Below are positions 36,131-55,646 of a stretch of DNA of 64,000 nt, piece after piece. The notes under the pieces are model-generated. The model was given only the letters and a program-made list of their open reading frames with translations, ran no database searches and was not told the origin of the DNA. Made by a program: the position numbers and the translations under genes. Within the stretch, counting starts at the first letter, position 1. Each line of letters opens with the position of its first letter. Source of the stretch: Anolis carolinensis (Eukaryota). The stretch is from assembly GCF_035594765.1 (NCBI RefSeq), contig NC_085845.1, positions 30,560,024 through 30,624,023 on the forward strand. Reading direction: 5' to 3'.

Positions 36131-37119
36131 TAACCTGCTGCTTTTAACTTGTCTATAAATCATTTGAAGTTGGGCATGTGTATTGACATTGTCAAGTCCA
36201 CATAGAACACAAAATTATACCTTCCTTGTTGAACAGCTGCACAAACTTCCGGGTACAATTCAAAGTCATGTCCCTACATGGTTTAGTCCTAACTATCTGA
36301 AAGACTGTATCTCCTTATAAAAATCTACCTGAATCCTATGATCTACAGTTGAGGATCCCCCCCCCCCAAACCTCCATTTTCTTTTCACCAGCAGGCAAAG
36401 ACTTCCTTTTCAAGCAGGCTTTTAACATGTAAGCTAGAGAACTTTTTAAGGGTTTTTTTTTCAAAATGTATGTATGTTTTAAATGTTTATACTGTTGTAT
36501 CTGCTTTTCATTATTTTAAAATATATATTGTGATTTTTGTTGCTTTTTTTTTTGGATTTGGAAGATGCCTTGAATCTTATTCTGGGAGGAAGGTAGCATA
36601 CAAATGCAGTAAATAAATAAAGATGTGGGGAGGACTACAGTACATATACTCCTGTAGGATTTGTCCAAACTGGATAAATGGTGTGGTAAATATGGTTTGC
36701 TGTTAAGTGAACAGATGCATGCTTTGGCAAAAGCCTTAGCTTTATACACATTGGCTTATTGATAGCCCTGAGTTGAGGAGAGCCTTTGATTCAATGGGAT
36801 TGGCCTATAACTGTGGTAACTCACAATTGATTTGCTAGGTCTACACTAGTTGTAAATGACCAACAGGAAACCAGCCATGGATTGGAATCTGTACCTATGT
36901 TGACTGATCAGGAAGGAGATGTTGTGGTGAGTTGTGTTGAGAGTATATCTAGAACTGTAATAAGAGATTTCATATTGGGGGTTGTTGAGAAAGGAACTGT
37001 GAAATAAAATAATCAGCATTTTGCTACTAATTTGATTCTTGATCATGACAATGGACTGATGACCTGTAACCTACCTCAGTCCAGAAAGATCTAGAGCATT
37101 GCTTTTGTATTATGCTTTT

Positions 37120-38450
37120 TTTTATTAAATTGTAAATAAAGATTTTACAAAAGTACAAACCATTACAGCAAAAGTACTAAATATTCAAAAACAGCAGAGT
37201 AGAAAAAAGGAAACTGGGAAAAGTGGGGGAGGGGAAAGGAGAATACGTGCGCGCACACACACACACATATATATATATATGTAATTGACTACAATTAAAA
37301 TTAACACTAAACTATGCTAAGGACTAATACACCATACTAAGACACTAACCTAATGACTATATGCAAACACATCAGGGCTCTGACCCCACAATCCACACTG
37401 CAATGAATTAAATCCTTTAGGATTGCTAATACTGGTAACTCAAATATCATTACATCATGATAATTGGTCATAAAATCCATAAAATGCTCTTCATCTTTAA
37501 CATTCACATTATCTTAGCAATTTGGGCTAACTCAGCAACTTCAACAACAATCCATCCTTCCATCATCAGTGCTCTGGTCCACTTGCAGGTTTGAGTAAAC
37601 AGTATTCTACCGACTGATTTCATGTATTGAAGAAGTAGCCCAGAGTTGTTTATCTTGTTCATGGTCCTTAATACATAACAAAAATATCACTGGTAACATT
37701 GCAGATCCCATCTTCAGATTTCTTTAAGTCAACATCTATATCCCAGACTAATAACTTTTTCTTATGAGTCTCCTATATGTGAAAGATCTGTTCTCTTGAC
37801 ATCTCCAACTTTAGTTTGATGCATTTTGGACATTTGTTATTTGGATTTAAGTATCATTTATCCATGTTATGGAGCCCCGGTGGCTCAGTGGATTAAAACC
37901 CTTGTGCCGGTAGGACTGATGACTTGAAAGTTGTGTTGCTGACCTGAAGGTTGCCGGTTCAAATCTAACCTGGGGAGAGCGCAGATGAGTTCCCTCTATC
38001 AGCTCCAGCTCCATACATGAGAGAAGCCTCCCACAAGGATGGTCAAAACATCTGGGTGGCCCCTGGGCAACATTCTTGCAGATTGCCAATTCTCACTCCA
38101 GAAGTAATTGGTGGTTTCTCAAGTTGCTCCTGACATGACAAAAAAATCATCATGTTGTACACTTATGTTTCAGTTACTACCCAAAGTAAATGTTTTATCT
38201 TTGGTCCACAGTTTTTTCACATAATCATTTGAACATTATGCCCAAAATATTGAGCCCAACTTCTCATATAATCTTTTACTGGTTCATCATCTGTCTGTCA
38301 TTCCAAAATATATTTGTACACTTTTTTTTACTTACATGATCATCATTCTTACACAATTCTAACTAAAGTTAAATTCCTCCAGCCTCCTTAGTTTTTTTTT
38401 CTTGTACTCTTAAAGTTCTCTTTAAATTGCAAACAAAAGAAGCAGTCAAT
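37120..38450 (-). mobile_element. Degenerate L1/Tx1-like LINE 3' fragment with a nested SINE
   Basis: Poly-T/tttatt end at 37120 and Trp-rich, AT-rich antisense remnants. Confidence 0.4.
37871..38146 (+). mobile_element. tRNA-derived SINE, A-tailed
   Basis: ggagccccggtggctcagtgg box A, ggttcaaatc box B, ctcctgacatgacaaaaaaa tail. Confidence 0.85.
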
Positions 38451-38564
38451 CTCTTGACTTGTTTTTAGGATACAGTAAATAGATCTAAGGTGACACTGAT
38501 GAATCTTCTGAGTAAATAGTGATTAGCCAGTTTTAGACAGGACGCCACACATTCTGAAGTACAT

Positions 38565-38862
38565 GTTGTATATCTCTAGTCCAAAATGTTTGAGACTAGA
38601 GTTATTTTCTATTTTTGAAAAGACTTTATAATACCTGTATTTGCATATATGTAATAATGAGTTATCTTGGAAATAGGACCCAAATCTAAACATGAAATCC
38701 ATTTCACAAACACCTAACCTTTTATACATTTTTAAAACAATGTTTGTGTATGAAACAATGTTTGTGTACATTCAGTCATTGAAAAACAAAGGTATCACTA
38801 TTTTAGGCATCCCTGTAGACAATTTGGGATTTTGGAATTCTGGATGAGGGATGCTCAACCTG
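38565..38862. mobile_element. Tigger/MER2-like DNA element
   Basis: gggatgctcaacctg-TA terminus. Confidence 0.55.
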
Positions 38863-39502
38863 TATTAAGTTTGTATCTTGAAGCTTCTCATCTTCGTCTC
38901 CCAGAGGATTTCAACATCTTTGGATGCTCAAGTCCCATTATAATTCAATGGTGTAGTAAAATGGCGTTCCGTATATAAAACAGCAAAATCAAGGTTTGCT
39001 TTTTGGAATGGTTTGGTTTTCATTTTTAAAGAATATTTTGAATCTCTGGATAGTTTAATACATAGACACAGAATCTGTGGACACAAAGTGCTGACTAATT
39101 GGCAGTACAGCTTTCAGTTAGAGCAGTATAGAAGCACAAAGGAAAATTCCCACCTGTTATTAGAAGGAGAGAGGGAATCCTTCAAAGAAGTTACTGGCAA
39201 GAGGGCAGGAGACCTTCAAAAATGGAGGATAGGGACACACACACACACGTCAAAATTAGACCATTTTCTGTTATGGTGTTTCTTCAAATTGTTTCCCGCC
39301 AATAGTGACCTTAAAGCAAACACATCATGAGGATTTCTTGGCAATACTTGTTCAATGAAGGTTTACTTTTGCATCCCTTTAAAGTTGAGAAGTTGCAAAT
39401 TGCCCATAGACACCAGTGGGTTTCTATGATCTCTAGGATCATGGTCCAGCGCTCAAACCTCTATACCACACTGGCCTTTGCTGCTCATTGAGCGTTTCTC
39501 AT

Positions 39503-40036
39503 TTATTCATCTTCATCCATCTCTTCTGGAGATGGACTATATGCAACGCCAGTTTCAGGTACAGACAAAGACACTGCTTCTTGCCACAATGATGTTTTTG
39601 ACATGTCAAAGGAGATCTCAAAGAAATTCTCAGATTGTCCATCTTGTTTTTCCATTAACAGCTGATAGTCTCCAAAGCGAACCAAGCATCTCTGTGGAAT
39701 GATGAACTTGTTCAGGAAGGCCAATTCAACACTGTCTACAATTAACTTAACCCTTTTACTCAAATTCATAATCTCAAAAACAAGCTCAGAGCTGCCGAAG
39801 GGTCTAAAAAGCTGAAGGGCAAACTGAATCCGTGAAACATGTGAGTCCACAAAGTAAAAACGACAGATGTCACAGTTTCTTCCAAATTTAACCAATTCAT
39901 CCACTCTCAGCTGCTCTCGCTGGCAAAACCTTATGGCACGGAATACTTGCTTTTTCTCTTGTTCTGGATGGTAGACGGTGATATTGAGAGAGGTGGTGGT
40001 CTCTTCAGTATCTGCAGTCTCAAATGCAGTCGCCAT
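39503..40036 (-). CDS. TIFA: TRAF-interacting protein with FHA domain A, copy 1 (177 aa, single coding exon)
   Basis: N-terminal FETADTEET (T10 corresponds to human T9), FHA motifs VKFGRN and VSRIQF, C-terminal PEEMDE. Acceptor ttcttccag at 40056, Kozak gccATGg. Confidence 0.95.
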   Translation of the reverse strand: MATAFETADTEETTTSLNITVYHPEQEKKQVFRAIRFCQREQLRVDELVKFGRNCDICRFYFVDSHVSRIQFALQLFRPFGSSELVFEIMNLSKRVKLIVDSVELAFLNKFIIPQRCLVRFGDYQLLMEKQDGQSENFFEISFDMSKTSLWQEAVSLSVPETGVAYSPSPEEMDEDE

Positions 40037-40459
40037 GGCTGTACCTCAGAAAATCCTGGAAGAAAAAAATAGCTTCAATTTGACTGGAAAAAGGGATGCT
40101 TAGAAATGGAAGTATTTGCCTTTAGCTTCTTCAAAAGTGTGCTATTTCAGACACAGGTTGGAAACATACCTTTTTGGGATTACAGGCCCCATAATAATTC
40201 CTGATCTTTACTTTCCAGTGCTCATTTTTACCCATGTGAATGGGGGAAGTACGCCGAAAGGGGCAATGGGGGCACCATGTTTAGTCCTCCTTCCAGAGTC
40301 ATGTTATTCATTCAGTCCCATTGTTGCTACATTTGGCACAATATCTAAAGCAGGCTGGTCATGGAGGCTCTTCACATGATTTTAAATGCAGTTGTTTTGT
40401 GTCTTCAAGTTGACTTTTGACCTATGGCTATGGCTCTAAGTCGTTCAACAGCCTAGAAA

Positions 40460-40723
40460 GGAGCTACAGTGGCACAATGGGTTAAACCCTTGTGCTGGCT
40501 GAACTGCTGACCTAAAGGTTGGATTGCTCACCTGAAGGTTGCCAGTTTGAATCTGTGAGATGGGGTGAGCTCCCGTCTGTCAGCTCTAACTCATAGGGAC
40601 ATGAGAAAAGCCTCCCAGCAACACAACCGGGCACACCCTGGGCAACGTCTCTGTAGATAGCCAATTCTCTGATACCAGAAGCAACTTGCAGTGTGTTCTC
40701 AAGTCACTTCTGACACAATAAAA
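40460..40723 (+). mobile_element. tRNA-derived SINE (same family as 37871)
   Basis: ggagctacagtggcacaatggg head, ctgacacaataaaaa tail. Confidence 0.8.
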
Positions 40724-40815
40724 ACAGCCCAGAAATACATCTTACCACATTAAAACAGTGGATGTGGCTCTTAATGAGACATGCTGCATTATCACAGGAT
40801 GTCTATGCCCTACAT

Positions 40816-41191
40816 CAGGGGTCCTCAAATAAGGCCTGTGGGCCAAGGACATTTACCTGACCACCACCCTCAGTTTTAGACTTAGGCTCGCCCAAAGTCT
40901 GAAATGACTTGAAGGCACACAACAACAGCAATCCTAATTAACCTGACTATCTCATTAGCCAGAAACAGGCCCACACTTCCCATTGAAATCCTGATAGGTT
41001 TATGTTAGTTAAAATTGTTCTTATTTTTAAATATTGTACTGTTCTTTCATTATTGTTGTTGTTTTTCTTGCACTACAAATAAGACATGTGCAATGTGAAT
41101 TTGTCAGTGTATTTTAAAATGATAATTCAGCCCCTCAACAGTCTGAAGAATTGTGGACCGGCCCTCTGCTTAAAAAGTTTGAGGACCCCTG
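40816..41191. mobile_element. hAT non-autonomous element
   Basis: caggggtcctcaaa / tttgaggacccctg TIRs; TSD ccctacat/ccctacac. Confidence 0.9.
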
Positions 41192-41571
41192 CCCTACACT
41201 ACTGAAGAAATTATACTGTTTAGCGGGTATTGCACAACCTGATATCCATCAGGAAGTAGCAGTCAACAATGAAAGGACCAAGGCATTGACATCTCTGGCC
41301 CATCCTCTGTTCGGATATCAGGCAGCAAGCCAACGCCTTAAATCAAGAAATAGCTTCCTAAGATCTACAAAGATAATTGCAGGAACACCTCAGCAAGCGA
41401 GAGTCCAAAAGTGGCAGGCTAAAACCCAGAACATCAATCAGTGACTGAGACCAGATGAGAAACTCACTCCTGGACAGAAGACTGGGCTTGGGTCAAAAGT
41501 GTCTGCCTGGCGGCTGTTGAATCTGTCTGTGAGTAAATCAGTATTATTATAATTATTATTACACTGGGAAG

Positions 41572-42345
41572 AATAATAGAATCATAGAATAATAGAGTTG
41601 GAAGAGACCTCATGGGCCATCCAGTCCAACCCCCTGCCAAGAAGCAGGAAATCACATTCAAAGCACCCCCGACAGATGGCCATCCAGCCTCTGCTTAAAA
41701 GTCTCCAAAGAAGGAGCCTCCACCACAGTCCGGGGGAGAAAGTTCCACTGCTGAACAGCTCTCACAGTGAGGAAGTTCTTCCTAATGTTCAAGTGGAATC
41801 TCCTTTCCTGTAGTTTGAAGCCATGACTTCCCTATGACTTTCCCTCACATATTTATATATGACGAATGGCTATCATGTCTCCTCTCAGCCTTCTCTTCTG
41901 CAGACTAAACATGCCCAGTTCTTTTAAGCCGCTCCTCATAGGGCTTGTTCTCCAGACCCTTGATCATTTTAGTTGCCCTTCTCTGGACACTTTCCAGCAT
42001 GTCAACATCTCCCTTCAATTGCGGTGCCCAAAATTGGACACAGTATTCCAGATGTGGTCTGACCAAGGCAGAATAGAGGGGGAGCATGACTTCCCTGGAT
42101 CTGGATACTGTAATCCGATTTATGCAGGCCAAAATCCCATTGGTTTTTTTCACCGCCGCATCACATTGTAGGCTCATGTTTAACCTGTTGTCCACGAGGA
42201 CTCAAAGATCTTTTTCACACGTACTGCTGTCGAACCAGGCATTCCTCATTCTGTATCTTTGCATTTCATTTTTTTCTGCCTAAGTGGAGTATCTTGCATT
42301 TGTCCCCGTTGAACATTTTCTTAGTTCCGTCCCATCTCCCTAATC
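41572..42345 (-). mobile_element. CR1 LINE 3' portion
   Basis: [41 protein letters not shown]...[13 protein letters not shown] with an (ATTCTATG)-type tail. Confidence 0.93.
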
Positions 42346-42932
42346 TGTTAAGACTTTGGAAGCAGATAGGAGGCTTCTCCCAATCTGAAAAGAGTGCTTG
42401 CTTCTCTGTTTATGGTTAAGGCCTGTGCTGTACCCACAAGCAAAATAAAAAGAGAAAACTCTAAAAAAAAAAAAAAGACTGGGTGACCTAGAAGGCGCTG
42501 AACAGACTGTGTTCTGGCACTACGAGATGCAGAGCCTATCTTAAGAAATGGGGTTACAAAGTGGAGTCCACAACTTGCGAGTTTGGAGAAAAGCAAACCA
42601 CAGACCACTTACTACAATGCAGCCTGAGCCCTGCCACATGCCACATCTCACAGTGACATCAGAGGCACTCCAAGTGGCCAGCTTCTGGTCAAAGAAAATC
42701 TAGTATAATGCCAAGTTTTTAACATTATTTGTGGTATGGAAATCTCTAATGGTGCAGCAGGTTAAACCAATGAGCTGCTGGTGTGGATGCACTCTAAGAG
42801 GGCAGGAGCAGCAGTTTTCCAGGCGGCATGTGGCCATCCTCGCTGCCATTCTTTGCCCAATCGCCGACGTGTCACAACACGGAAGACAACTCATCCCACC
42901 TTCCCTTTTTGCAGCCAGGAAATAGGAGCGCG

Positions 42933-42949
42933 ACTTTCACTTTCGCTTT
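42933..42949. promoter_or_regulatory. Tandem IRF-binding element / ISRE in a CpG-rich patch of TIFA copy 1 intron 1
   Basis: ACTTTCACTTTCGCTTT (AAAGCGAAAGTGAAAGT on -), a multimerised GAAANN motif. Confidence 0.65.
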
Positions 42950-43364
42950 GATTTCCGGCTGGGCGCAGGCGCTTGCAAGGAATACTTAGGAAAGCCTCAC
43001 ATGCCCGGGTCCAAACTCGGCTCAGTCCCAAGCCCTGTCCTCACACTCGCTTGATCAAGAACAGCAGAGGTCCCATATCCAAGGTGAGCTGGTACCTTTC
43101 AATACAGCCTTGGAATCAGCTGTTGCAAAATCGAGTAAATACACATCGGGTTGCTTTTTAGTGGCTTTTGGTCCTTGAACCAAACGGAGGAACCCAGGAG
43201 TGAAGCAATAAACCTGTCCGAGAGATAGACAGGTTAGAGCTTGGAAAGGGGACTTTTTTTTGCGCGGGGGAGTTGCAAGTCTCAGAATCGCTTTCGAGAT
43301 AACGACACCCCCTCCCCAAAAAGGTGAGTTTAGGCAAGGATTAAACGTTGTCTCGATCACTCAC

Positions 43365-43480
43365 CTTTTCAGAAGCGTTGCCCTAAAACTGATGGACGAG
43401 AAGGTTCAAACTTCAGAGCCGGATTTCTGGGCTGTTTCTTTCAGCTCTCGCTTTGAAGGAGGATGTTTGTCAGCTTTGAG
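43365..43480 (-). other. TIFA: Non-coding exon 1 of TIFA copy 1 (5' end approximate)
   Basis: Minus-strand donor AAAAG|GTGAGT at 43365/43364. Homologous to 53361-53470 of copy 2 (shared gatttctgggctgtt.ctttcag block). Confidence 0.7.
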
Positions 43481-43487
43481 AGCTCAC

Positions 43488-43561
43488 GGGACTTCCCTTT
43501 CTGTCTTCCCGCCTCTAAAAGAGAGGAGGGGGTGATCGTTATGTCTGCTGGGGAATTTCCC
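43488..43561 (-). promoter_or_regulatory. TIFA copy 1 proximal promoter with two NF-kB sites
   Basis: GGGACTTCCC at 43488-43497 and GGGGAATTTCCC at 43550-43561, next to the exon 1 homology block. Confidence 0.7.
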
Positions 43562-43705
43562 TCTGTTTCTCTTGATCCAGACACACAGAGAGAAGGAGGG
43601 AGGGAGAACGCAAGGTTCAGTGGCTAAAGAGACAAGCAGCAAAAGAATCCACAGGGTTGGATTATTTAAATATTTAATATATGTTGTTATTTTTTTATTG
43701 CAATA

Positions 43706-44028
43706 CAGTAGAGGTTCACTTATCCAACGTAAACGGGCCGGCAGAACGTTGGATAAGCGAATATGTTGGATAATAAGGAGAGATTAACGAAAAGCCTATT
43801 AAACATCAAATTAGGTTATGATTTTACAAATTAAGCACCAAAACATCATGTTATACAACAAATTTGACAGAAAAGATAGTTCAATACACAGTAATGCTAT
43901 GTAGTAATTACTGTATTTACTAATTTAGCACCAAAATATCACGATGCATTGAAAACATTGACTACAAAAATGTGTTGGATAATCCAGAACGTTGGATAAG
44001 CGAGTGTTGGATAAGTGAGACTCTACTG
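43706..44028 (+). mobile_element. Tc1/pogo-type MITE, copy A
   Basis: cagtagag..tcacttatccaac TIRs, TA TSD. Confidence 0.9.
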
Positions 44029-44709
44029 TACTTATATCCCGCCCTTCCCACCCATAGGGGACTCAGGGCGACTTACAATAAAACACAATATAAAAATATT
44101 ACAACAATTCCATCAATTAAAATTAAATACATTAAACACTGATAAAAATATACATATAAATATACACATGGCGCATTTCGAGTCTGATAGCTGGTCTGTC
44201 ATTGAGTTCTAGGATGGTAATAATTGTTACCGCTGTTGTTATATGCCATCAAGCCAGCTTTGATTTACAGCAGTGGTTCCCAACCTTTTTTTTGACCAGG
44301 AACCATTTGACCAGGGACCAATCTCCAATATTAGTACCAAAACAGTTACAAATCAGTTTTTTGGTCAACTTTAGATTTGGTTTGGTTATTTGGAGTGCTG
44401 ATTCAGAAAATTGCATTGGAAAGCCATATACAAAATACAAAACCAGAAAAAATGTAAATATTGAAACAGCAATTCAGTATTTAAAAACAAATGCAGTAAC
44501 AGTCTTGGGCAGCTAAGCTCAGTAAGACAAGCAATAGAAGAACCCATTAAATCCCATGATTACATTATTACATAGATGATGGCACCACAGAAAAGACCAT
44601 GTTCCAACTTTCCATTAACCTAATATCATTTGTGTAGGACATAGAGCAGATATTAGGGTAAAGTTGTAAAAGATGGGCAGGCCCATATGGACCAAACTTC
44701 TAGCTTATA

Positions 44710-45053
44710 CAGTATTCCCTCACTTATCACTGGGGTTAGGTTACAGGACCACCCGCAATAAGTGAAAATCCGCAAAGTAGGGACACTATATTTATTTTAA
44801 TAGTCGCACATTATTTTAGTAGCTATACACTATTTTAAGTCTTTATCAACCCATTGTGTGTGGATAAATCGCCTCCTTCTCCTACCGTTGCCGCTTGGGC
44901 TCCTTTTCTCTCCCTTTGGCTTCTCCTTCCTCCCTTCCTTAGGCTGTAAATTGCAATTTTTTATGATTTATAATAGTCTTTTAGAGTTTATTAAAAAAAC
45001 CACAAAACTTCGAATCCATGAAAAGTGAAAGGCGAAGTAGTGAGGGAACACTG
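44710..45053. mobile_element. Tigger-like MITE
   Basis: cagtattccctcact / agtgagggaacactg TIRs, TA TSD. Confidence 0.85.
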
Positions 45054-45134
45054 TATACTATATCAGACAGATTTCATCCTGATTTGTTGCTCCTCTGCAC
45101 CATTCTTTTGCATTCATGCTACCAATAAGTTTCC

Positions 45135-45735
45135 AGTACCAATTCAAAGTGCAGGTTGTCACCTACAAAGCCCTAAACGGTTCGGGTCTTGCTTAACTTC
45201 AGGACTGTATCTTCCTCTACAAACCAGTGTGGGCTCTAAGATCTGCTGAGGAGGCCCTTCTCTCACTCCCATCTCAGTTGCAATCACGGTTGGTGGGGAC
45301 GAGAGAGAGGGCCTTCTCGGTAGTGGCCCCTCGGCTTTGGAAGTCTCTCCCCAGAGAGATTAGATTAGCCCCCACCTTGTCCACCTTCCAGAAAGACTTG
45401 AAGACATGGATGTGCCTTTGATTAATGGTTTAGCTTCTGATTAAGTCCAGCCTGGCCCTACAGTTTACATTTTGCACAAGCCCTTGTCCTGCCCTATTAG
45501 TATCAGATCTGTACGTGCCCAATTCTCTCGGCTACTGCATTTTTGATTCTCTGGTTGATGTTTTATGATGTTTACATTCTACTGCTTTTATTGTTATTGT
45601 TTTAATTTTTATGGTTATATGTTTTTAATTGTGTTACCTGCAACCTTTGTTTATGCTGTGCTTGGTCCCCATGTAAGCCACCCTGAGTCCCTTCAGGGAG
45701 TTGGAGGTGGGATATAACAATAAAGTTATCATTAT
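45135..45735 (+). mobile_element. L2 LINE 3' end
   Basis: ALRSAEEALL...[35 protein letters not shown] with a ccaccctgagtccc tail. Confidence 0.85.
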
Positions 45736-46005
45736 TATTACTTTCAGTGGACAGTAGACTGCCTAATATGACCAGAATATTGGACTCACTAGATAGACAT
45801 GTAGGATACTTTAACACTGTAAAATGATATCACTGTGATTCTGCTTTCACTGCCATGGTTCCATCTTCTAGAACCCTGGAATTCACATCTGTGGAGAGGT
45901 TTTTTTTGAGTCTCAGAAGGGTCTAGAACCTCATTAAACTACAAAGCTCAGAATTCGACAGGATTCAGTTGTGTCAGTTAAAGTGAAGTCATAGGGCTAT
46001 AATTA

Positions 46006-46312
46006 CAGTAGAGACTCACTTATCCAACATTCTGGATTATCCAATGCATTTTTGTAGTCAATGTTTTAATACATCGTGATATTTTGGTGCTAAATTCGTA
46101 AATACAGTAATTACTACATAGCATTACTGCGTTTAGAATTACCTTTTCTGTCAAATTTGTTGTATAACATGATGTTTTGTTGCTTAATTTGTAAAATCAT
46201 AACCTAATTTGATGTTTAATGGGCTTTTCCTGAATCCCTCCTTATTATCCAACATATTCGCTTATCCAACGTTCTGCCGGCCCGTTTATGTTGGATAAGT
46301 GAGACTGTACTG
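46006..46312 (-). mobile_element. Tc1/pogo-type MITE, copy B (inverted relative to A)
   Basis: Same TIRs and interior as 43706, TA TSD. Confidence 0.9.
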
Positions 46313-46483
46313 TATGTTGAATGCGATAACCCCTAGTTTGATCCACCATAAGTCTACTTAGATGCGGATCCATTAAGCGTGTTGATGCATGCTGTTACAG
46401 ATCCCTCTTGGCTGAGCTCATTTACATCATTTCTTTTAAAAAGTAACTTAATAGGTTTGAAATGCATGGTACTTGACTGTACA

Positions 46484-46756
46484 CAGGGCCGTAGAAAGAA
46501 AACAATTTCAGGGGGGGGGGTTTGAAAATTTCGGGGGGGGGGTTAACCCCTAGCACACACCCCTCCCCGCTACAAACCTGTCAATATCTGCTTGAGATAG
46601 TGCCTGGAGGGACTCTTAATGTTTTGTGTCTCATAGACTTAGCATGGGGATTTGGTTAACCAGTTAAAATTCATGAGTAAACCAGGTTTTTTTTATAACC
46701 TGAAAAATTTCGGGGAGGGTTTGAACCCCTAAAACCGCCCCCTCGCTACAGGCCTG
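46484..46756. mobile_element. hAT MITE
   Basis: cagggccgtag / ctacaggcctg TIRs; perfect TSD ACTGTACA; empty site in the paralogue at about 54280. Confidence 0.88.
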
Positions 46757-47380
46757 ACTGTACATAATGTGTTGTTGCAAATTGGCGCAGCTCCTTCAGG
46801 AAGTTCCTCTCTTGAGCAATAATTGAAACCCACCCTGTCATCTTGCACTTTTTCACAAGTTCTTCCTCATAAACCTCCTCTCACTTTCTGTACCTTTCTT
46901 CTTGAGTAATTTACAAGAAATACATGTTTTCAAATAAGAAGGAACCACCTCTTTCTGGATGTTGTTAATTTTATTGTTTTATTGTTGGTATCTATTCTGC
47001 CAGGAAGAGTTAGATCATATGGTATCTTTTTGAGGATTAACTAGTTTATTGCTGAAAGAGTGTTGGTTTATTACTCCTTCCCATGCAAAAGATTACACGT
47101 TTAACTCTTGTCATTGTCATGCATACTACCTCACACAGTATAGAGTTTGGAAAAGTTATTAAAGGGAGATAAGAAGGTTGAGAAGACTTTAGCCAGTATG
47201 AACTATCCGGAAAAGGAACTTTCCCAAACTCTGCAGAAGACACCTTCTATTTGAAGTAGAGACGTTTGAATATAAAGTGTTTGAATTAGGAGCAGAATTA
47301 TGATCTGGCAATGTAGCATACACTAGAATCAACATTCGCCCTGAGTATTATGAGGTTACCTGAACGCCACCTGGAATATA

Positions 47381-48336
47381 CTGTGATACACATATATAAG
47401 TCTATACATTTTAGTCAAAACATCTGGGTTAACTTATCCACAGATCAATATAAGAACTGTACTTAGTTACTTTTTAAAATATTAAGAATTATCAGGTTTT
47501 CTGAATAGAGTAGCAAAAGGCAAGAGCTTTGTCCCAAGAGAACCAAAAAGAAGCACTGACCTCCTTCTATTCCAGTGATTCCTGACCTTTGGGCCCCAGG
47601 TATTTTGGACTTCAAATCCCAACCAATTTACCATTTGTTAGGAATCATGGGAGCTGAAGTCCAAAACACCTGGAGGCCCAAAGGTTGGGAACCACTGCTC
47701 TATTCTCTCTCCCATGTTGCTGGTTCTTGCTTTTTTTGAAAGCCTGGGTGGGAAAATGGTGGTATTAGTGGAAGTTCTTTAGCACTTTACCCCCAAAGGA
47801 GTACTGAGAGTATAGAGGTGGTGGGTGCTTCTTTTTGGTTCTCCCACAGTGGACTAAATTATTTCATTTTGCCATTTTACTTAGAGAAGCAAATGGTTCA
47901 TTTTTTTTATAAGAGTTAAGGTACAGTACTGGGACATGAGAGAAGCCTCCTAGCAGGATGGTAACACATCCAGGGCAACGTCTCTGTAGACTGCCAATTC
48001 TCTCCCACCAGAAACAGCTTGCAGTATGTTTTCAAGTCACTTCTGACACAATAAAAAAGGTACAATACTTACATTACATTATCTATATTTTATAAATGCA
48101 TTTTATGAATATTATATGTAAGTTATTTTTTTAACTGATTTATAGTGTATTGTACTGTTTTTATATGTCTGTTTTATTGTAAGCCGCCCTGAGTCCCCTG
48201 TTGGGTGAGAAGGGCGGGATATAAATATTGTAATAAATAAAATATTGTAATAAATTGCACTGTGGATAAGCTGACCCAGGTTTTTGAGGTTGCTTTGTTG
48301 AGTAACATTTGTAGACTTATATATGAGTATATAAGG
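47381..48336. mobile_element. Degenerate Tc1/mariner-like element with nested MITE (47573-47697) and SINE fragments, at the duplication junction
   Basis: acatatataagtcta / tagacttatatatgagtat inverted ends; similar to 22375-22685. Confidence 0.5.
47573..47697. mobile_element. hAT MITE
   Basis: cagtgattcc / ggaaccactg TIRs; TSD ttctattc/ctctattc. Confidence 0.8.
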
Positions 48337-49160
48337 TACTTTTGAAAGATGATGCAGATGGTGATGTTCAAATATTTTGTTTCTTGCATTATGAATCTTT
48401 CAAGTTTTAATTGTCAAGAAAATATTCTCAGTGCTAAGTATAAGTTTCCTGGCACTTGTAAAAAAAACCTTTTGATTTTTTAAAGCAAGCTGATTTGTAA
48501 TGGCACATGCTCTTTAATAATACACCAGAGTGTATGTCACCTGCACTGATATTTGATTAATAACAAACCTGAATACTGATAATATTCAAAAGCACTGTAG
48601 ATCAGAAAGAAGCAGTATTTGTTTTGCATGATTGCCTCCTATTAGAATTACTGGAGTGCATCCTGGCTTGCTATTCCTACCGTAGGCTTATCTTTCTACT
48701 TCTCTAAATAAAGAATAAGGTTTCTTGCATGTGAAGTTAGGGGCATGTAATGACATTGCCAAGATCAAAGAGAATATAAAATTGTGCAAGGTGGTTAAAA
48801 AAAAACAGACCAAGGGGAGATATTAACTTACAGTAGTCCCATAGGATCTGTCCAAAATGCATCATTGGGCATGGCAAATATGGCTTGTTGCAAGTAAGCA
48901 GATGCATGATGTGGTTTCATACAAGTTGGCATGTTGTTAGTTAGCCCTGAATAGAGGGAAACCTTCAAGTCAATGTGATTGACCTACGTGGTGACTCATC
49001 AATAATTGATTTAATGGGTCTACTCTAGCTGGGATTAACTAATGGTGCCAGTATAGACTGGGGTTTCAGCCTATTTTGACTGATCAGAAAAATGTTGTGG
49101 TGAGTTATGTTGAAAGAACTGAGGAAGTGGGTTTTTATATATGCCAAGCTATGAAATAAA
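48335..49160 (+). repeat. Degenerate duplicate of AP1AR 3'UTR/downstream sequence (about 34460-34850 and 36630-37010); start of duplication unit 2
   Basis: Shared colinear blocks such as gttcaaatattttg, aaacctgaatact, gcagtatttgttttgcatg.ttgcctcct, ttgactgatcag and atgttgtggtgagtt. Confidence 0.85.
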
Positions 49161-49696
49161 AGGCCTTTAGTTATTTTTCATGGAGGGATTATTTGTAGGG
49201 GCACTTCCAGACATACGTTAAACTTGCTTTGGAGCAGGTTAAAGAAACCCGCTTTGAAACAGATTTAAGTCATGCCGAGAGGTGGGGGGGGGGATCCCTA
49301 CTCCCCCCCTCACCTCCTGGCTGGTTATTGGTATACTCCAGGAGGCCTGCTGAAGAGATGTTATGGCGGCCCAGTCAATTTTAATTTAGGGTTTTTTGGG
49401 GTGAGGTGGGTTCGGTGTCCCCATGCCCTCCCAAAAGTTATTGGGAGGGGGGGCATGTGGACACCCAACGGGCAAAGCCCAAAGAATTAAGGTGGCCTAT
49501 GGGAACTGGCCTCAGGATTGTAGAAGCAGTCCCATACGTCAGTTGCCACGGGCCCTAAACTCCATTAGCTTTGGGACTTTCAGGAAAGCCTAGGTCTAAT
49601 GGAGTATCAAAGTGATTCGGGAGAAAACACTTTGTCTCAAATTACTTCGCTTTTATCTGATGTTTCATTTGGACACCTCAGGTAAAAGTCCGACAG

Positions 49697-49771
49697 TGTT
49701 ACACCCCAAGGCTGCAGGAGCACCCTGAAAACCAGACAGGAGCCAGTATAACACACAAGCGGTTTATTGAA

Positions 49772-49809
<38 letters not shown>

Positions 49810-50680
49810 GTCTATGCGTAGTTAACGAAAAGAGTCAGTATGAGGATTAGTCCTGAATATGAAGTCTTTAGCAGTTCAAAACAAGTTCAGCAATGTCCGA
49901 TTTGTAATCCACCAGTGAAACTCGATAGTTTCACACAAAAGTCAAGGATAGTCTTTAAGACAAGAGCCAGGAACCAAACGCTGCAAAACTGCAACTATAA
50001 TCCACTTGGAGAGTCCTGTCACAGAACAAGGAAAGCAAAGTAAACAAGGCAAAGTCAGTCTCCACTCAGGAACAAGGATAGCAAGGTAACAAAGCAAGGT
50101 CTACTCGGAAGTCATGGCACAGCTTACACGGAACTGGGAACCTGGCACGGTTTCCAGACAGGAGACAAGGCTAGGAGCTGGATATTGGAACCTCTTCCGA
50201 GGAAAGGCAAAGTTGACACCGCAATGAGAACACAAAGAGGAACACCTTTAAGGAGATCCCAAGGTTGCAAGATTAAGGGAGTGCAGGATCCACAAAACTT
50301 CACATGGGAAAGTTAGTCATTATTGAGCCTTAGAGCTAACCTCTTGCTTCTTCGAACACCCTCCCTTTTGCTCCTATCTCTTGTAAAAAACTCCGATTAA
50401 ACAGTCCATTTTCTCCCAGATCAACGCCATCTGGTGTAGGCAAGATTGACAAGACATTGGAATGCTCTCCAATTAGTGGATCCTCTGGCGTTACAGCATC
50501 AGGCAGCTGCAAGGCCAAGGGGCCTCATTCCAAACCTGGAATGTCTCCTAGATCTGTATCATAATCTGCTTCTAAATCCATCTCCTGGTGAAATGTAGGC
50601 CGCGATGGCTGAGCCACAACAGACAGGGCCTGCATTTTGGGCCCTGTCTTGAAGGTCCTAAGTTTCCACCTAGGATCACA
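49697..50680 (-). mobile_element. Probable solo LTR (Gypsy-like)
   Basis: TGT...ACA termini, minus-strand AATAAA near 49765, repeated agtc motifs; absent from the paralogous unit. TSD not confirmed. Confidence 0.45.
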
Positions 50681-51674
50681 GAGGACAGAATTTCTCTTTT
50701 CTCCTTCACCTTGACGTAGTCTTTGGAAGCAAAAGAGATATAAGTGGCCATATGCAATATTCATATAGAGAATCAAACATTGAACACAAAATAAGTTATG
50801 GCCTCAGGAGTGTTAGATGTTAGCTGGTGTCTGCAAAGCCATGAGCTTTCACCTAGCACTGTGCAGAAGCTCAATAGAAAATGCCCACCTGTTTCTATTA
50901 CTTCTAGCTGAGGTGGTCCAGTAATAGCAGTTACTACCAGGAAGGAGGGGAGCCTTCAAAGAATAATGGCAAAATGTCTGTAACGCAGAAGGAATAGAAA
51001 ATATTAAACTAACCTATTCATAGTGCAATTTAATGTGCAGTTGTACAAAGCTGGTTGCTATGGAACATGGGCAAGGAAGAATGCAATGAATATAAAACAT
51101 CAGTATTAGTTCATTTCTTTTTAAAAAAATCATTTCCTTATTGGTTTTAGAAGACATCCTAATTCACAAGCAATGCATTCTATGTTTTAGAGAAAAAGAG
51201 TGATGTGTATGTACATATATGCACAGACAAAGCTAAATTGAACAAAGACTATAAACACAATAATAAAAAACTTAACTATTATAATAAACACAAACTAAGG
51301 ATACACTAACTTACTGAAACACAAAGACCCCACCCACTAATGAAAAGGAAAAACTAAGGAAATCAATTACAGATCTCATAGTTGAACAATTTCAAAGAAC
51401 CATAACCACATATTGTGAATCATTACATTTGTTATTACTCAAAATTTAGTCCTTTTTTCATTGTTGTTGTGTATCTTTGAATGATTTCCAAGTTATGGTA
51501 ACAGTAAGTTGTTAGGTTTTCCTTCACCTTCCTCTGGGAGTGAAAGAGTGTGACTTGCCCACAGCAGGTTTTTTTCAATGTCTAAGAAGAGATTCAAGCT
51601 TTGGTCTCCAGAGTCATAGTCCAACACTCAAGCCATTCCAATATTCTGGCTCTTTGTTTCACGTTGTTTCCCAT

Positions 51675-52208
51675 TTATTCATCTTCATCTGCCTCCACTG
51701 GAAATTCATTTTTTACAACACCACTTTCAGGTATAGGCAAGGTCACTACTTTTTGCCTCAGTGATGTTTTGGACATGTCAAAGCTGGTCTCAAAAAAATT
51801 CTCAGATTGTCCATCTTGTTTGTGCATTAACAGCTGGTAGTTTCCAAAGCAAACCAAGCATCTCTGTGGAAGGATAATCTTGTTCAGGTAGGCCAATTCA
51901 ACATCGTCAACAGTTAGCTTGACTCTCTTACTCAAATTCTTAATCTCAAAAGCAAACTCAGAGCTGCCAAAGGGTCTAAAAAGCTGGAGGGCAAACTGAA
52001 TACGTGAAACTTGTGTGTCTACAAATTGAAAATGGCAAATGTCACGGTTTCTTCCAAACTTAACAAACTCATCCACTGTCAGCTGCTGTCGCTGGCAGAA
52101 CTTTATGGCACGGAATACTTGCTTTTTGTCTTGTTCTGGATGGTAGACAGTGAGATTGAGAGAGGTTATGGTCTCTTCAGTATCTGCAGTCTCAAACGCA
52201 GTCGCCAT
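51675..52208 (-). CDS. TIFA: TRAF-interacting protein with FHA domain A, copy 2 (177 aa; true start is the ATG at 52208, not 52265)
   Basis: Colinear with copy 1 without gaps (about 79% aa identity). FETADTEET, VKFGRN, VSRIQF, EIKN, PIPE, PVEADE. The splice acceptor ttccttctag at 52229 lies inside the ORF-track extension. Confidence 0.94.
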   Translation of the reverse strand: MATAFETADTEETITSLNLTVYHPEQDKKQVFRAIKFCQRQQLTVDEFVKFGRNRDICHFQFVDTQVSRIQFALQLFRPFGSSEFAFEIKNLSKRVKLTVDDVELAYLNKIILPQRCLVCFGNYQLLMHKQDGQSENFFETSFDMSKTSLRQKVVTLPIPESGVVKNEFPVEADEDE

Positions 52209-53360
52209 TGGCTGTAGTTCAGAAAATCCTAGAAGGAAAAAAAAATAGCTTGGCAATTGAAGCATTGACCTGCAGCTTCTCTAGAAGTGTGTTGTTTCAA
52301 GTACAGACTGGAAACATTACTTTTCTGGTTCTTGAGCTAGTAGGGTTTTTATTTCAAGGACTAATTTTAGTCCCTTATATTCCTCATGTGAGCAAGGTAA
52401 ATCTATGGTAAGTGACAATGAGGCGGCTAATGTTTAGTCCTATCTCCAAAATTACATCATTCTTGTAACCCTTACTACTAACAAGCTTGGTATAACATTT
52501 GAAGCATGGATGTCATATTGAATTTGAATGCTGTTTGGACTTAATTGTTTTGTGCTGTCAAGTTGACTCTAACCTATAGCAATCCTCTCCTAGGGATTTC
52601 TTGGCAAGCTTTATTTAAAGGAGAGATGCTACTAGTGTCTCTTGGTTGGACCCCTGTATGGATAATTAAGGCCTCCTCAAAACTAGACTGGAGTAGCTGA
52701 GTACCACTTTGCCAAAATGATCAACCAAAATTTGACTGCCATGTGATTTAGCTCTCTCAGGAATTATTAATCTTGGGGAGAGAGGGCAGTCTATAAATAA
52801 AGTATTTATTTTATTTAATCTAAAATGTACTAAATTATCATTATTTTACTAATGCTTTTCAGGCTACTCACATTGCAACATACTTCACTTAGAAGAGGGC
52901 TTCTAATGTAACAAATTATGTTGCCACCATTTTGTAAAAACACATTTTGAGTAATTAGAAGGAAAAACCACTTATCTCTCAGTGTTAAGCCCACCCGCCC
53001 AACATATTTTAAAGTACAGCATTTGCTCTAGACTAAGGCAAGTAGGCAGTATTTCATTGGAACAATTTATTTTCCCCTTTCTTTCATCCCATTGCAAAAT
53101 AGATATCTGAATCTTTGATTTTAAAGGGTTTTGGACCTTGTAACACCCCCTGTGAAGAGAGACACCAGCATTAAACCTAGCTCAAACAGACAAGCAAGTC
53201 TGAGCTTGGAAAAATTACTTTTTTGGGCTGGAGTTCCCAAAATACCTTTCCAAAAAATACCCCAAGATCTAAGATAAACAATAAGCAAGAAGGTGGTGGG
53301 TAGGATGGATAGCATACTTTGGGTCCCTCTTAATCTTGTTTGCTTTTCTCGCTCACTTAC

Positions 53361-53470
53361 CTTTGCAAGACGACTTCCAAAATCAGCCAGAAAAATCAGG
53401 TGAATGAAAATGCCTGTTAAAACGTAGTGTTGATTTCTGGGCTGTTGCTTTCAGGTCCTGCTTAGGAAAT
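53361..53470 (-). other. TIFA: Non-coding exon 1 of TIFA copy 2 (5' end approximate)
   Basis: Minus-strand donor CAAAG|GTAAGT at 53361/53360; paralogous to 43365-43480. Confidence 0.7.
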
Positions 53471-53494
53471 CAGCAACATTGAGCCTGAACCTCC

Positions 53495-53588
53495 TTTATA
53501 TTTTCCCACCTCTGGAAGAGAGGAGGGGGAGATGAATGTTATCAGTTGTTATCACACATTCATCACTTATGTTTGTTGAGGAATTCCC
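53495..53588 (-). promoter_or_regulatory. TIFA copy 2 proximal promoter: TATA box plus kB-like site
   Basis: TATAAA on - at 53500-53495; GGGAATTCCT on - at 53588-53579. Confidence 0.6.
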
Positions 53589-53705
53589 TTCTTTTTTATT
53601 GAGTGAGGCACGTAGGACAAATAGGGAGAGAGCAAAGTCCAAGAGATAAGGAGATAAATTAACAGTAAAGGATGAGATCATAATATAGACTGATTTTTTT
53701 TAATA

Positions 53706-53985
53706 CAGTACGGCAGAATGTTGGATAAGCGACTATGTTGGAAAATAAGGAGAGATTAAGAAAAAGCCTCTTAAACATCAAAATAGGTTATGATTTTACA
53801 AATTAAGCACCAAAACATCATGTTATACAACAAATTTGACAGAAAAAGTAGTTCATTACACGTTAATGCTATGTAGTAATTACTGTATTTACGAATTTAG
53901 CACCAAAATATCATGATATATTGAAAACATTGACTACAAAAATGCTTTGGATAATCCAGAACGTTGGATAAGTGAGACTCTACTG
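53706..53985 (+). mobile_element. Tc1/pogo-type MITE, copy C (left TIR partly deleted)
   Basis: Interior highly similar to copy A; TA flanks. Confidence 0.88.
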
Positions 53986-54129
53986 TACATGTTTTTGATG
54001 TTATTGAGTGCTATCAAGTCAGCTTTGGTTTGTAATGTACATAAGAGACCTCCCAGAGAACCTGTTATTACCAACTCCTGTACACTAAAGACCATGGCTT
54101 CCTTAAAGTCACTAATGTGGTCTCTTTTT

Positions 54130-54860
54130 TGTTTGATCCAGTAGAAATCTTCTTATAGCCTCTTTCGTATTAAACCTGTTGATGCATATTGTTATATCCT
54201 TCTTTTCACTGAGCCCATTTACAACAGTTCTTACATATTAACACTCTTTCAACTCGGGAAACTAAGAGTGCATGGTATTTGACTATACCTAATGCATTGT
54301 TGCAAATTGGCACTGACTTTTCAATAAGTTCCCTTCTTGAGCACTGTTTGAAAGCCACCTTATTATCTTTCTGAGAATCTGGTTTTTCAAACAGTTCTTC
54401 ACCACAGCCCTCTTCTCACTTTATGTACCTTTCTTGCAGAGTGACTTACAGGAAATGTTTGGTTTCAAGTGAGGAGGGCCCACCTCTTTCTGAATACTGC
54501 TGATTTTATTGCTTTATTGTTGGTATCTACTCTGCCAGGAAGAGTTGAATCATATTGTCACTTTTTGAGGAGTCAACGATTTATTGTTGAAAGAATGTTT
54601 GTTTATTACTCCATCCTGTAGAGAAGATCTTAAATTCGACTCCTAGTATGGTCATGTATGCTACCTTGTAGAGTTTTAGATCTTGGAAACACTTGGTTTT
54701 TTACAAGGTCAAGAAGCCCATAAGAGGAACTTTCCCAAGCTCTGCAGCAGGCATCCTTCTATTTGAAGTACAGATTGGTGGGTAGTTCGAGGGTATAGTG
54801 TTTTCTTTTCAGAACAGAGTTGCAATCTGGCAATATGGCTCACTCTAAAATCCACATTCA
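54130..54860 (+). repeat. Paralogue of 46335-47340 (TIFA upstream region)
   Basis: Shared blocks tgttgatgcat, ttgcaaattggc, ttattgttggtatcta.tctgccaggaagagtt, ggaactttccc and ccttctatttgaagta. Confidence 0.85.
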
Positions 54861-55323: not shown

Positions 55324-55646
55324 CAGTAGAGTCTCACTTATCCAACATAAACGGGCCGACAGAACGTTGGATAAGCGAATATGTTAGATAATAAGGAGGG
55401 ATTGAGGAAAAGCCTATTAAACATCAAATTAGGTTATGATTTTACAAATTAAACACCAAAACATCATGTAATACAACAAATTTGACATAAAAAGTAGTTC
55501 AATATGAAGTAATGTTACGTAGTTATTACTGTATTTATGAATTTAGCACCAAAATATCATGATGTATTGAAAACATTGACTACAAAAATGTGTTGGATAA
55601 TCCAGAACGTTGGATAAGTGAGTGTTGGATAAGTGAGACTCTACTG
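55324..55646 (+). mobile_element. Tc1/pogo-type MITE, copy D
   Basis: Full cagtagagtctcacttatccaac TIRs, TA TSD. Confidence 0.9.

What the first reader, a model, noticed from the sequence alone, without database searches (positions are those of the whole stretch)
39503..52208. Two intact, diverged TIFA paralogs: a candidate two-adaptor ADP-heptose sensing system
Seen: two 177-aa ORFs with no indels or stops and 38 aa differences, each with a splice acceptor, non-coding exon 1 and promoter. Both retain T10 (human T9), FHA G52/R53/S68/N91 and PxExxE. Established: ALPK1 senses bacterial ADP-heptose and phosphorylates TIFA T9, driving FHA-pThr oligomerisation (TIFAsomes) and TRAF6/NF-kB signalling. 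Mammals have one TIFA at this locus; the inhibitor TIFAB is elsewhere and lacks the TRAF6 motif. Inference: identical first 13 residues allow cross-oligomerisation, so mixed TIFAsomes with different tails could tune signal output. I cannot confirm whether this duplication has already been described.
Basis: partly seen in the sequence, partly recalled or inferred. Interest (0 to 1): 0.8.

Follow-up and report, generated by a model that had tools for sequence, protein, structure and literature searches.

The report
Two TIFA immune-adaptor genes in anoles
Anole lizards carry a tandem duplicate of TIFA, the adaptor that relays detection of the bacterial sugar ADP-heptose; both copies are intact and under selection but have diverged differently, a modestly interesting lineage-specific expansion of a gene that is single-copy elsewhere.

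Summary
Two 177-codon TIFA reading frames lie 12.2 kb apart on the minus strand: 139/177 residues identical, no gaps, no stops. The genome is Anolis carolinensis or a very close relative.

- **Origin.** A. sagrei has both copies in the same order. Sceloporus and Phrynocephalus have one. The tree places the duplication in the anole lineage. The duplicated unit is a whole gene: part of the AP1AR 3'UTR, the coding exon, the intron, and exon 1 with its promoter.
- **Copy B** now sits antisense inside ALPK1 intron 1. Its codon-model omega is about 1. It is still not drifting: there are no indels (6.3 expected), the coding sequence diverges at half the flank rate, and 0 of 27 replacements hit ultra-conserved sites (7 expected).
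- **Copy A** is strongly constrained now (omega about 0.2). It has fixed changes at four positions nearly invariant in 119 other vertebrate TIFAs. These are the human K88, Y105 and L111 positions and P159, covering the dimer interface and a TRAF2 motif.

"Mixed TIFAsomes" remains plausible but untested. RefSeq already annotates both genes in A. sagrei. I found no paper describing the duplication.

The parts
39503..40055 (-). TIFA copy A coding exon (exon 2). CDS is 39503-40036 including the stop; the 5'UTR part is 40037-40055; the acceptor AG is at 40056-40057.
   Evidence: ORF; sequence; TIFA structures at E=1e-49. The exact protein is in public collections, and its A. sagrei ortholog is XP_060635061.
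40056..43364 (-). TIFA copy A intron (3.3 kb). It contains a repeat insertion at 41588-42350 and ALPK1 exon 1 on the opposite strand.
   Evidence: Acceptor; donor position; repeat.
43365..43480 (-). Candidate non-coding exon 1 of copy A. The donor is AAG|GTGAGT and the last exon base is 43365. The 5' end is not determined.
   Evidence: The block and donor are conserved in A. sagrei A, both B copies and Sceloporus. There is no transcript evidence.
43481..43650 (-). Copy A promoter-homology block. It has kappaB-consensus sites at 43488 and 43551 and a CCCCTCCTCTCTT/GGCGGGAA block invariant in six sequences.
42933..43083 (+). ALPK1 exon 1 with an ISRE-like element at 42933-42944. The donor GT is at 43084-43085. 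This exon lies inside the TIFA-A intron, in a head-to-head overlap.
   Evidence: The A. sagrei gene call for ALPK1 starts at the orthologous position; sequence; motif scan. In this window the frame annotated in A. sagrei has a TGA after 17 codons.
51675..52228 (-). TIFA copy B coding exon. CDS is 51675-52208 including the stop; the 5'UTR part is 52209-52228; the acceptor AG is at 52229-52230.
   Evidence: ORF; sequence; Pfam FHA; named TIFA relatives. The A. sagrei ortholog is XP_060632194.
52229..53360 (-). TIFA copy B intron (1.1 kb). It has no homolog of the ALPK1 exon 1/ISRE patch.
53361..53500 (-). Candidate non-coding exon 1 of copy B. The donor is AAG|GTAAGT and the last exon base is 53361. 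The 5' end is not determined. The frame leading into exon 2 is closed by a stop, so the CDS starts at 52208.
   Evidence: This block is 67% identical to the Sceloporus upstream region over 528 nt.
53501..53650 (-). Copy B promoter-homology block. The invariant CCCCTCCTCTCTT block is at 53516. The kappaB site is degenerate (GGGAATTCC at 53580) and there is no consensus kappaB or ISRE.
34478..47340 (.). Duplicated unit, copy A side. It runs from inside the AP1AR 3' region through TIFA-A to an element in ALPK1 intron 1.
   Evidence: Collinear paralogous blocks.
48348..54862 (.). Duplicated unit, copy B side. It includes an orphan copy of AP1AR 3'UTR sequence at 48348-49116.
   Evidence: The right flank is collinear with the Sceloporus region upstream of TIFA.

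Best explanation
An old tandem segmental duplication in the anole lineage copied the whole TIFA gene. It happened after the split from Sceloporus and well before the A. carolinensis/A. sagrei split. The copied unit held part of the AP1AR 3'UTR, the single coding exon, the intron, and non-coding exon 1 with the core promoter. Both daughters are maintained as protein-coding genes with every element needed to act downstream of ALPK1: Thr10 (human Thr9), the FHA phosphothreonine pocket, and the TRAF6 PxExxE motif.

They have diverged asymmetrically.
- **Copy A** keeps the ancestral left flank and the ISRE/kappaB-bearing zone shared with ALPK1 exon 1. Soon after duplication it fixed replacements at four nearly invariant positions. 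K88M and Y105F lie in the intrinsic dimer interface, L111I is nearby, and P159S lies in a TRAF2-binding motif. Since then it has been under strong purifying selection.
- **Copy B** is nested antisense in ALPK1 intron 1. It has lost the ISRE patch and the consensus kappaB sites. It keeps all canonical core residues, while its variable positions and tail change quickly.

Inferred mechanism, not shown: ALPK1 phosphorylates Thr10 of both. Because the heads and pockets match, they could join the same phosphothreonine-FHA assemblies. They would then contribute different dimer contacts and different TRAF2 recruitment, under different transcriptional control.
For: **Duplication and timing.**
- The same two-copy arrangement occurs in A. 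sagrei.
- Sceloporus and Phrynocephalus have a single copy within +-10 kb.
- The tree is ((carA,sagA)100,(carB,sagB)100) with 96-98% support for the anole clade.
- Informative sites split 46:0:0, which argues against gene conversion.
- The unit extends into the promoter and the AP1AR 3'UTR.

**Constraint on A.** Crown omega is 0.20, and omega=1 is rejected at p=1e-5.

**Constraint on B.**
- It has 0 gap events against 6.3 expected from 100 events in 8481 aligned noncoding bp (P=0.002).
- It has 28 differences in 534 bp against a flank rate of 0.116 (P=3e-7).
- Nonsynonymous differences are 21 in 421 sites (P=2e-6).
- Paralog coding divergence is 13.5% with 0 gaps. Paralog flanks diverge 29-39% with 17 gaps in 756 bp.
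- 0 of 27 polarised B-lineage replacements fall on the 46 sites that are >=95% conserved in 119 vertebrate TIFAs. Seven are expected (P=1e-4).

**Asymmetry.**
- A carries M, F, I and S where the others have K in 119/119, Y in 117/119, L in 119/119 and P in 115/119.
- Lys88 and Tyr105 are TIFA dimer-interface residues (PMC10945758).
- Pro159 and Glu151 are required for TRAF2 binding (PMC12457700).
- The ISRE and kappaB consensus sites occur only in the A unit.
Against: - There is no expression evidence for either copy.
- The codon model cannot distinguish the B clade from omega=1 (p=0.99), and B differs significantly from A (p=0.004).
- Two A. sagrei haplotypes differ at 5 residues in B against 2 in A.
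- Copy B of this genome has K at the TRAF2-critical E151 position, although Phrynocephalus has K there too.
- Exon 1, the transcription start and promoter activity are inferred from homology only.
- Only two anole species were available.
- The effects of M90, F107, I113 and S158 are inferred from work on human and mouse TIFA.
Confidence: 0.7

Rival explanations
1. Copy B is a silent or decaying duplicate. Its ORF happens to be still open, and only copy A functions.
For: Omega is about 1 on the B stem and crown. B has more amino-acid differences between A. sagrei haplotypes than A does. One haplotype has L127S in the FHA core. carB has E151K. B has lost the ISRE patch and the consensus kappaB sites. 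Expression is unverified.
Against: Under neutrality since the species split alone, the joint probability of no stop and no frame-disrupting indel is about 6e-4. Coding divergence is half that of the flanks. 0 of 27 replacements fall at ultra-conserved sites against 7 expected. The splice acceptor, the donor and the core promoter block are conserved in both species. The single-copy Sceloporus promoter is also CpG-poor and lacks consensus kappaB sites, so B's promoter looks ancestral rather than decayed.
Confidence: 0.13
2. The roles are reversed. Copy B is the canonical signalling adaptor. Copy A, with its remodelled dimer interface and damaged TRAF2 motif, is a specialised modulator, analogous in logic to TIFAB.
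For: B keeps every nearly invariant residue while A has lost four. Lys88 and Tyr105 are conserved even in TIFAB and make dimer contacts. TIFAB regulates TIFA by heterodimerising through this interface (PMC10945758).
Against: A keeps Thr10, the phosphothreonine pocket and the TRAF6 motif, which TIFAB lacks by established knowledge. A is the more strongly constrained copy. A holds the ISRE/kappaB promoter zone shared with ALPK1.
Confidence: 0.2
3. The two coding exons are not independent genes but alternative terminal exons of one transcription unit. Transcription from the B-side promoter would read through and splice to the A exon.
For: Both lie on the same strand with B upstream of A. No transcript data are available.
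Against: Each coding exon has its own homologous exon 1 with a conserved donor, plus a promoter block. The A-side block is conserved in A. sagrei. RefSeq models them as separate genes in A. sagrei.
Confidence: 0.05
4. Assembly artefact: a collapsed or expanded haplotype creates a false second copy.
For: None specific.
Against: Coding divergence is 13.5% and flank divergence 29-39%. The same two copies occur with orthologous grouping in an independent A. sagrei assembly.
Confidence: 0.01

Closest known systems
Single-copy vertebrate TIFA (human/mouse; solved structures 4ZGI, 4YM4, 6L9U)
   Same: Both anole copies share several features with it.
- Length is 177 aa against about 184.
- The CDS lies in a single coding exon.
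- The locus sits between AP1AR and ALPK1.
- Thr9, G50, R51, S66 and N89 are present.
- The TRAF6 motif PxExxE is present.

The sequence match is E=1e-49.
   Different: - There are two copies in tandem.
- Copy A lacks the K88, Y105, L111 and P159 equivalents.
- Copy B is nested antisense in ALPK1 intron 1 and lacks the ISRE patch.
The TIFA/TIFAB paralog pair
   Same: This is a precedent for two FHA paralogs that heterodimerise through the FHA beta-sheet interface, with one modulating the other's TRAF6 signalling (PMC10945758).
   Different: TIFAB is an ancient paralog at another locus, without Thr9 or a TRAF6 motif (established knowledge). Both anole copies keep these features. They group inside squamate TIFA and match TIFAB only at E=4e-4.
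RefSeq models of A. sagrei: XP_060635061 (copy A) and XP_060632194 (copy B), both named TIFA
   Same: They are the orthologs of the two window copies, at 93% and 89-90% identity.
   Different: They are only automatic annotation. No paper in the searched library describes or analyses the duplication.

Membership tests
TIFA (TRAF-interacting protein with FHA domain A) | FHA domain homologous to TIFA's | tested here: met
   Copy A matches solved TIFA chains at E=1e-49. Copy B hits Pfam FHA above the cut-off and is 79% identical to A. Copy A alone falls below the Pfam FHA threshold.
TIFA (TRAF-interacting protein with FHA domain A) | N-terminal Thr9 phospho-acceptor in the DTEET context | tested here: met
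   T10 is present in all four anole sequences and in 119/119 other TIFAs.
TIFA (TRAF-interacting protein with FHA domain A) | Phosphothreonine-pocket residues G50, R51, S66 and N89 | tested here: met
   All are present in both copies. Their functional relevance is described in PMC10865109.
TIFA (TRAF-interacting protein with FHA domain A) | C-terminal TRAF6 motif P-x-E-x-x-(acidic/aromatic) | tested here: met
   A has PEEMDE and B has PVEADE. P, E and E are conserved in at least 117/119 others. The motif definition is in PMC12457700.
TIFA (TRAF-interacting protein with FHA domain A) | TRAF2 motifs Q150-E151 and P159-x-x-E162 | tested here: inconclusive
   A has QE present but S in place of P159. 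carB has PIPE present but K in place of E151. sagB has both motifs intact. The effect of these exact substitutions is unknown.
TIFA (TRAF-interacting protein with FHA domain A) | Intrinsic dimer-interface residues (E86, K88, K92, Y105, K108) | tested here: inconclusive
   B keeps all of them. A has M at K88 and F at Y105; the interface is described in PMC10945758. Dimerisation itself is not testable here.
TIFA (TRAF-interacting protein with FHA domain A) | Conserved synteny AP1AR - TIFA - ALPK1, head-to-head with ALPK1 | tested here: met
   Gene calls in A. sagrei, Sceloporus and Phrynocephalus loci, which are collinear with the window.
TIFA (TRAF-interacting protein with FHA domain A) | Phosphorylated by ALPK1 on ADP-heptose, forms TIFAsomes, activates TRAF6/NF-kappaB | not testable with these tools
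   This needs cell-based assays.
TIFAB | Lacks the Thr9 site and the TRAF6 motif; separate locus | tested here: not met
   Both copies have T10 and PxExxE and lie at the TIFA locus. The match to a TIFAB chain is only E=4e-4.
Expressed two-gene system (both copies transcribed) | Spliced transcripts from each copy | not tested

The most novel reading that the evidence does not exclude
Anoles run the ALPK1 pathway with two co-assembling adaptors that divide the labour. Copy A would be interferon/NF-kappaB-inducible, with a rewired dimer interface and weakened TRAF2 docking. Copy B would be a canonical TRAF2+TRAF6-competent adaptor, embedded antisense in the ALPK1 gene so that ALPK1 transcription and copy B expression are coupled. 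The ratio of the two in mixed phosphothreonine-FHA assemblies would set signal strength and adaptor turnover.
Probability: 0.2. Interest if true: 0.6.

Novelty: new member of a known kind. Interest (0 to 1): 0.42.

Why it matters
TIFA appeared as a single 90%-identity cluster per species in every other named species in my search. Several of its residues were invariant in 119 sequences.

The anole pair is a natural experiment. One copy is kept under strong selection and tolerates replacement of K88, Y105, L111 and P159. The other keeps them. This offers a ready-made way to ask what the dimer interface and the TRAF2 motif contribute to ADP-heptose signalling. It also lets one test whether paralog heteromers, as in TIFA/TIFAB, can arise repeatedly.

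It also shows a methodological trap. A codon-model omega near 1 did not mean neutrality here.

The scope is limited: one lizard lineage, a known gene family, and no functional data.

Tried and rejected
2. **P0006 and P0010.** Neither had a gene on record. I reached A. sagrei copy B through the copy A locus and the 196-aa ORF instead.
3. **CpG depletion as evidence of a dead B promoter.** Rejected, because the single-copy Sceloporus promoter is equally CpG-poor.
4. **Codon omega of about 1 as proof of neutrality.** Rejected after the flank-based, indel and site-conservation tests.
5. **Low dS of B explained by CpG content.** Not supported. I treat it as sampling noise: 7 synonymous differences, P=0.05.
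6. **A B-side copy of ALPK1 exon 1/ISRE.** None found.
7. **The 196-aa upstream extension of B.** This is read-through of the acceptor region, opened by a 1-nt difference in the 5'UTR. The exon-1 frame is closed by a stop.
8. **The conserved block at 56549-57316 as an ALPK1 coding exon.** It has no ORF, so it is more likely a conserved non-coding element.
9. **Absolute dating.** Not attempted, because the paralog noncoding alignments are near saturation.
10. **Joined exon model.** I built and searched no joined exon 1 + exon 2 model. The CDS lies wholly in exon 2, and exon 1 was examined on its own.


Full report
**1. Observation**

The window has two minus-strand ORFs, at 39503-40036 (177 aa) and 51675-52208. 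The second is 177 aa, and its frame stays open upstream to an ATG at 52265, giving 196 aa. They align without gaps at 139/177 identical residues, which is 38 differences.

Copy A matches solved TIFA chains at E=1e-49 and a TIFAB chain only at 4e-4. Copy B passes Pfam FHA, and its best relatives are proteins named TIFA. tblastn finds no third copy in the window.

Both copies have a pyrimidine tract and an AG acceptor 19-20 nt before the ATG. The 196-aa extension of B is only read-through of that acceptor region. It is opened by one extra base in the 5'UTR relative to A, which has an in-frame TGA there.

**2. Whose genome**

Copy A's exact sequence is in public collections. A 90-aa A. carolinensis UniProt fragment is identical to it over the first 83-84 residues. 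A. sagrei differs at five positions in that stretch. So this is A. carolinensis or a very close relative. This is an inference.

**3. Origin of the pair**

- A. sagrei loci L001 and L004 hold both copies in the same order and orientation, collinear with the window.
- Sceloporus (L002) and Phrynocephalus (L003) have one TIFA within 10 kb on either side.
- Nucleotide and protein trees give ((carA,sagA)100,(carB,sagB)100), with 96-98% support for an anole-only clade and Sceloporus outside it.
- Informative sites split 46:0:0 in favour of orthology. There has been no gene conversion since the species split.
- A profile search returned about 20 other named squamates plus tuatara, each with a single 90%-identity TIFA cluster. 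This survey covers annotated proteins only.

**4. What was duplicated**

The first self-comparison saw only about 660 bp of similarity. A sensitive comparison extends it collinearly:

| Copy A side | Copy B side | Identity |
|---|---|---|
| 39424-40431 | 51599-52583 | 75% |
| 43348-44004 | 53344-53976 | 69% |
| 36610-36943 | 48796-49116 | downstream block |
| 34478-34848 | 48348-48729 | downstream block |
| 46755-47340 | 54280-54862 | upstream block |

. The unit therefore runs from inside the AP1AR 3' region to a point in ALPK1 intron 1. This agrees with another first-stage note (s1-656288).

Within the 43.3-43.7 kb and 53.3-53.7 kb blocks, six sequences were aligned: two anole A, two anole B, Sceloporus and Phrynocephalus. 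All six share an invariant CCCCTCCTCTCTT...GG(C/T)GGGA block. A TGAAAG(C/A)AACAGCCCAGAAATC block is intact in the four anole copies and Sceloporus and is diverged in Phrynocephalus. Those same five also share a minus-strand donor, AAG|GTGAGT in A and AAG|GTAAGT in B.

That gives candidate exon 1 ends at 43365 (A) and 53361 (B). The introns are then 3.3 kb and 1.1 kb. The exon-1 frame of B is closed by a stop, so the spliced CDS is the 177-aa one. I did not build or search a joined exon model. The CDS lies wholly in exon 2.

**5. Relation to ALPK1**

In A. sagrei the ALPK1 gene call starts at the position orthologous to window ~43000 and spans the whole B copy. The window has the same exon, ending at 43083 with its donor at 43084. 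An ISRE-like element lies at 42933. This agrees with note s1-656289.

ALPK1 exon 1 therefore lies inside the TIFA-A intron. In Sceloporus it likewise lies between TIFA exon 1 and the coding exon. TIFA-B lies antisense within ALPK1 intron 1. The B unit has no homolog of the ALPK1 exon 1/ISRE patch.

**6. Selection**

Pairwise Nei-Gojobori estimates between the two species:

| Copy | dN/dS | Nonsynonymous differences | Synonymous differences |
|---|---|---|---|
| A | 0.15 | 13 | 20 |
| B | 0.77 | 21 | 7 |

I wrote a maximum-likelihood codon model (F3x4 codon frequencies, six taxa). It gives omega 0.29 for the A clade (stem 0.48, crown 0.20) and 1.00 for the B clade (stem 0.85, crown 1.05). B cannot be distinguished from 1 (p=0.99). 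A differs from 1 (p=1e-5) and from B (p=0.003-0.004).

Three further tests say otherwise.

- **(a) Flanks.** In 8481 aligned noncoding bp between the two anoles, divergence is 0.116 with 100 gap events. Against that, B's 534 bp show:
  - 28 differences (P=3e-7);
  - 0 gaps against 6.3 expected (P=0.002);
  - nonsynonymous differences far below neutral (P=2e-6);
  - only 7 synonymous differences, which is marginal (P=0.05).

  The joint chance of an ORF staying open in both species since their split is about 6e-4.
- **(b) Paralogs.** The coding sequence differs by 13.5% with no gaps. The flanks differ by 29-39% with 17 gaps in 756 bp.
- **(c) Site conservation.** None of 27 polarised replacements on the B lineage falls on the 46 sites that are >=95% conserved in 119 other vertebrate TIFAs. 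Seven are expected (P=1e-4). For the crown alone it is 0 of 19 (P=0.003).

B is therefore a constrained protein with a fast-changing periphery, not a drifting relic. CpG content does not explain the dS difference.

**7. Asymmetric divergence**

Copy A's lineage hit ultra-conserved sites at the random rate (5 of 20), and four of these are on the stem:

| carA residue | Human position | State in the other 119 TIFAs |
|---|---|---|
| M90 | K88 | K in 119/119 |
| F107 | Y105 | Y in 117/119 |
| I113 | L111 | L in 119/119 |
| S158 | P159 | P in 115/119 |

. All four are fixed in both anoles and then held under strong constraint.

Lys88 and Tyr105 make contacts in the TIFA dimer and are conserved even in TIFAB (PMC10945758). 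Pro159 and Glu151 are required for TRAF2 binding (PMC12457700).

Copy B keeps all of these, with one exception. carB has K at the E151 position, while sagB keeps E and Phrynocephalus also has K.

Differences are concentrated in the tail: 14 of 28 residues there against 24 of 136 in the FHA region (Fisher P=2e-4). This agrees with note s1-656274, though this tail is variable in all vertebrates.

Two A. sagrei haplotypes differ at 5 residues in B and 2 in A.

**8. Regulation (inference only)**

The A unit carries the ISRE and two or three kappaB-consensus matches, and these are also present in A. sagrei A. The B unit, A. sagrei B and Sceloporus have none. CpG depletion of the B block is not informative, because the single-copy Sceloporus promoter is just as depleted.

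**9. What could not be done**

Expression, the transcription starts and polyadenylation are therefore untested.

**10. Known or new**

RefSeq already models both genes in A. sagrei as XP_060635061 and XP_060632194. The latter changed from 177 to 196 aa between versions.

Full-text searches found no paper that mentions TIFA together with Anolis in a relevant sense. Searches pairing TIFA with lizards or squamates, or with duplication terms, listed no paper on TIFA among their top results.

**Verdict**

This is a real, old, anole-lineage tandem duplicate of a known gene. Both copies are under selection and have diverged in an interesting asymmetric way. The 'two-adaptor, mixed TIFAsome' idea is compatible with the sequence but remains untested.

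Noticed in passing
window 43001-43083 (+) vs L001:7372 downward: The ALPK1 CDS annotated in A. sagrei starts with an ATG in exon 1. In this window the same frame has a TGA after 17 codons. The true ALPK1 start is therefore probably in a later exon, and the A. sagrei N-terminal extension may be an annotation artefact.
   Followed up: partly
window 56549-57316: This block is 78% identical to Sceloporus over 847 nt, with a core of about 88-92% in translated comparison on both strands. It has no ORF of 80 aa or more. It is probably a conserved non-coding element, or an untranslated exon, in ALPK1 intron 1.
   Followed up: partly
window 43704-44030, 46014-46315 (inverted), 53711-53976, 55322-55648: Four copies of a repeat of about 300 bp, 90-93% identical to each other and SINE-like. 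One copy sits at the same relative position in both duplicated units.
   Followed up: no
window 41588-42350 vs 15149-16199 and 12330-12515: A dispersed repeat (78-90% identity) is inserted in the TIFA-A intron. This accounts for part of the size difference between the A intron (3.3 kb) and the B intron (1.1 kb).
   Followed up: no
window 48348-49116: An orphan copy of AP1AR 3'UTR-like sequence lies downstream of TIFA-B, carried along by the duplication. It is 67-71% identical to 34478-34848 and 36610-36943.
   Followed up: partly
window 39424-39480 and 51599-51660: Immediately after both stop codons lies a tRNA-derived SINE-like segment (ggtttgagcg.tggac...). It predates the duplication and forms the start of both 3'UTRs.
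   Followed up: no
window 43324-43329 (+): A second plus-strand donor (AAAG|GTGAGT) lies 240 nt downstream of the ALPK1 exon 1 donor. It is about 35 nt from the minus-strand TIFA-A exon 1 donor. It could mark an alternative ALPK1 first exon.
   Followed up: no
P0004 (A. carolinensis UniProt fragment, 90 aa): A public A. carolinensis model of copy A is identical for 83-84 residues and then diverges to a short different C-terminus. This implies a modelled splice inside the coding exon. It is either a truncated isoform or an annotation artefact.
   Followed up: no
window 12001-14000: This is the most GC-rich segment of the window (GC 0.51). It may be the AP1AR promoter CpG island.
   Followed up: no
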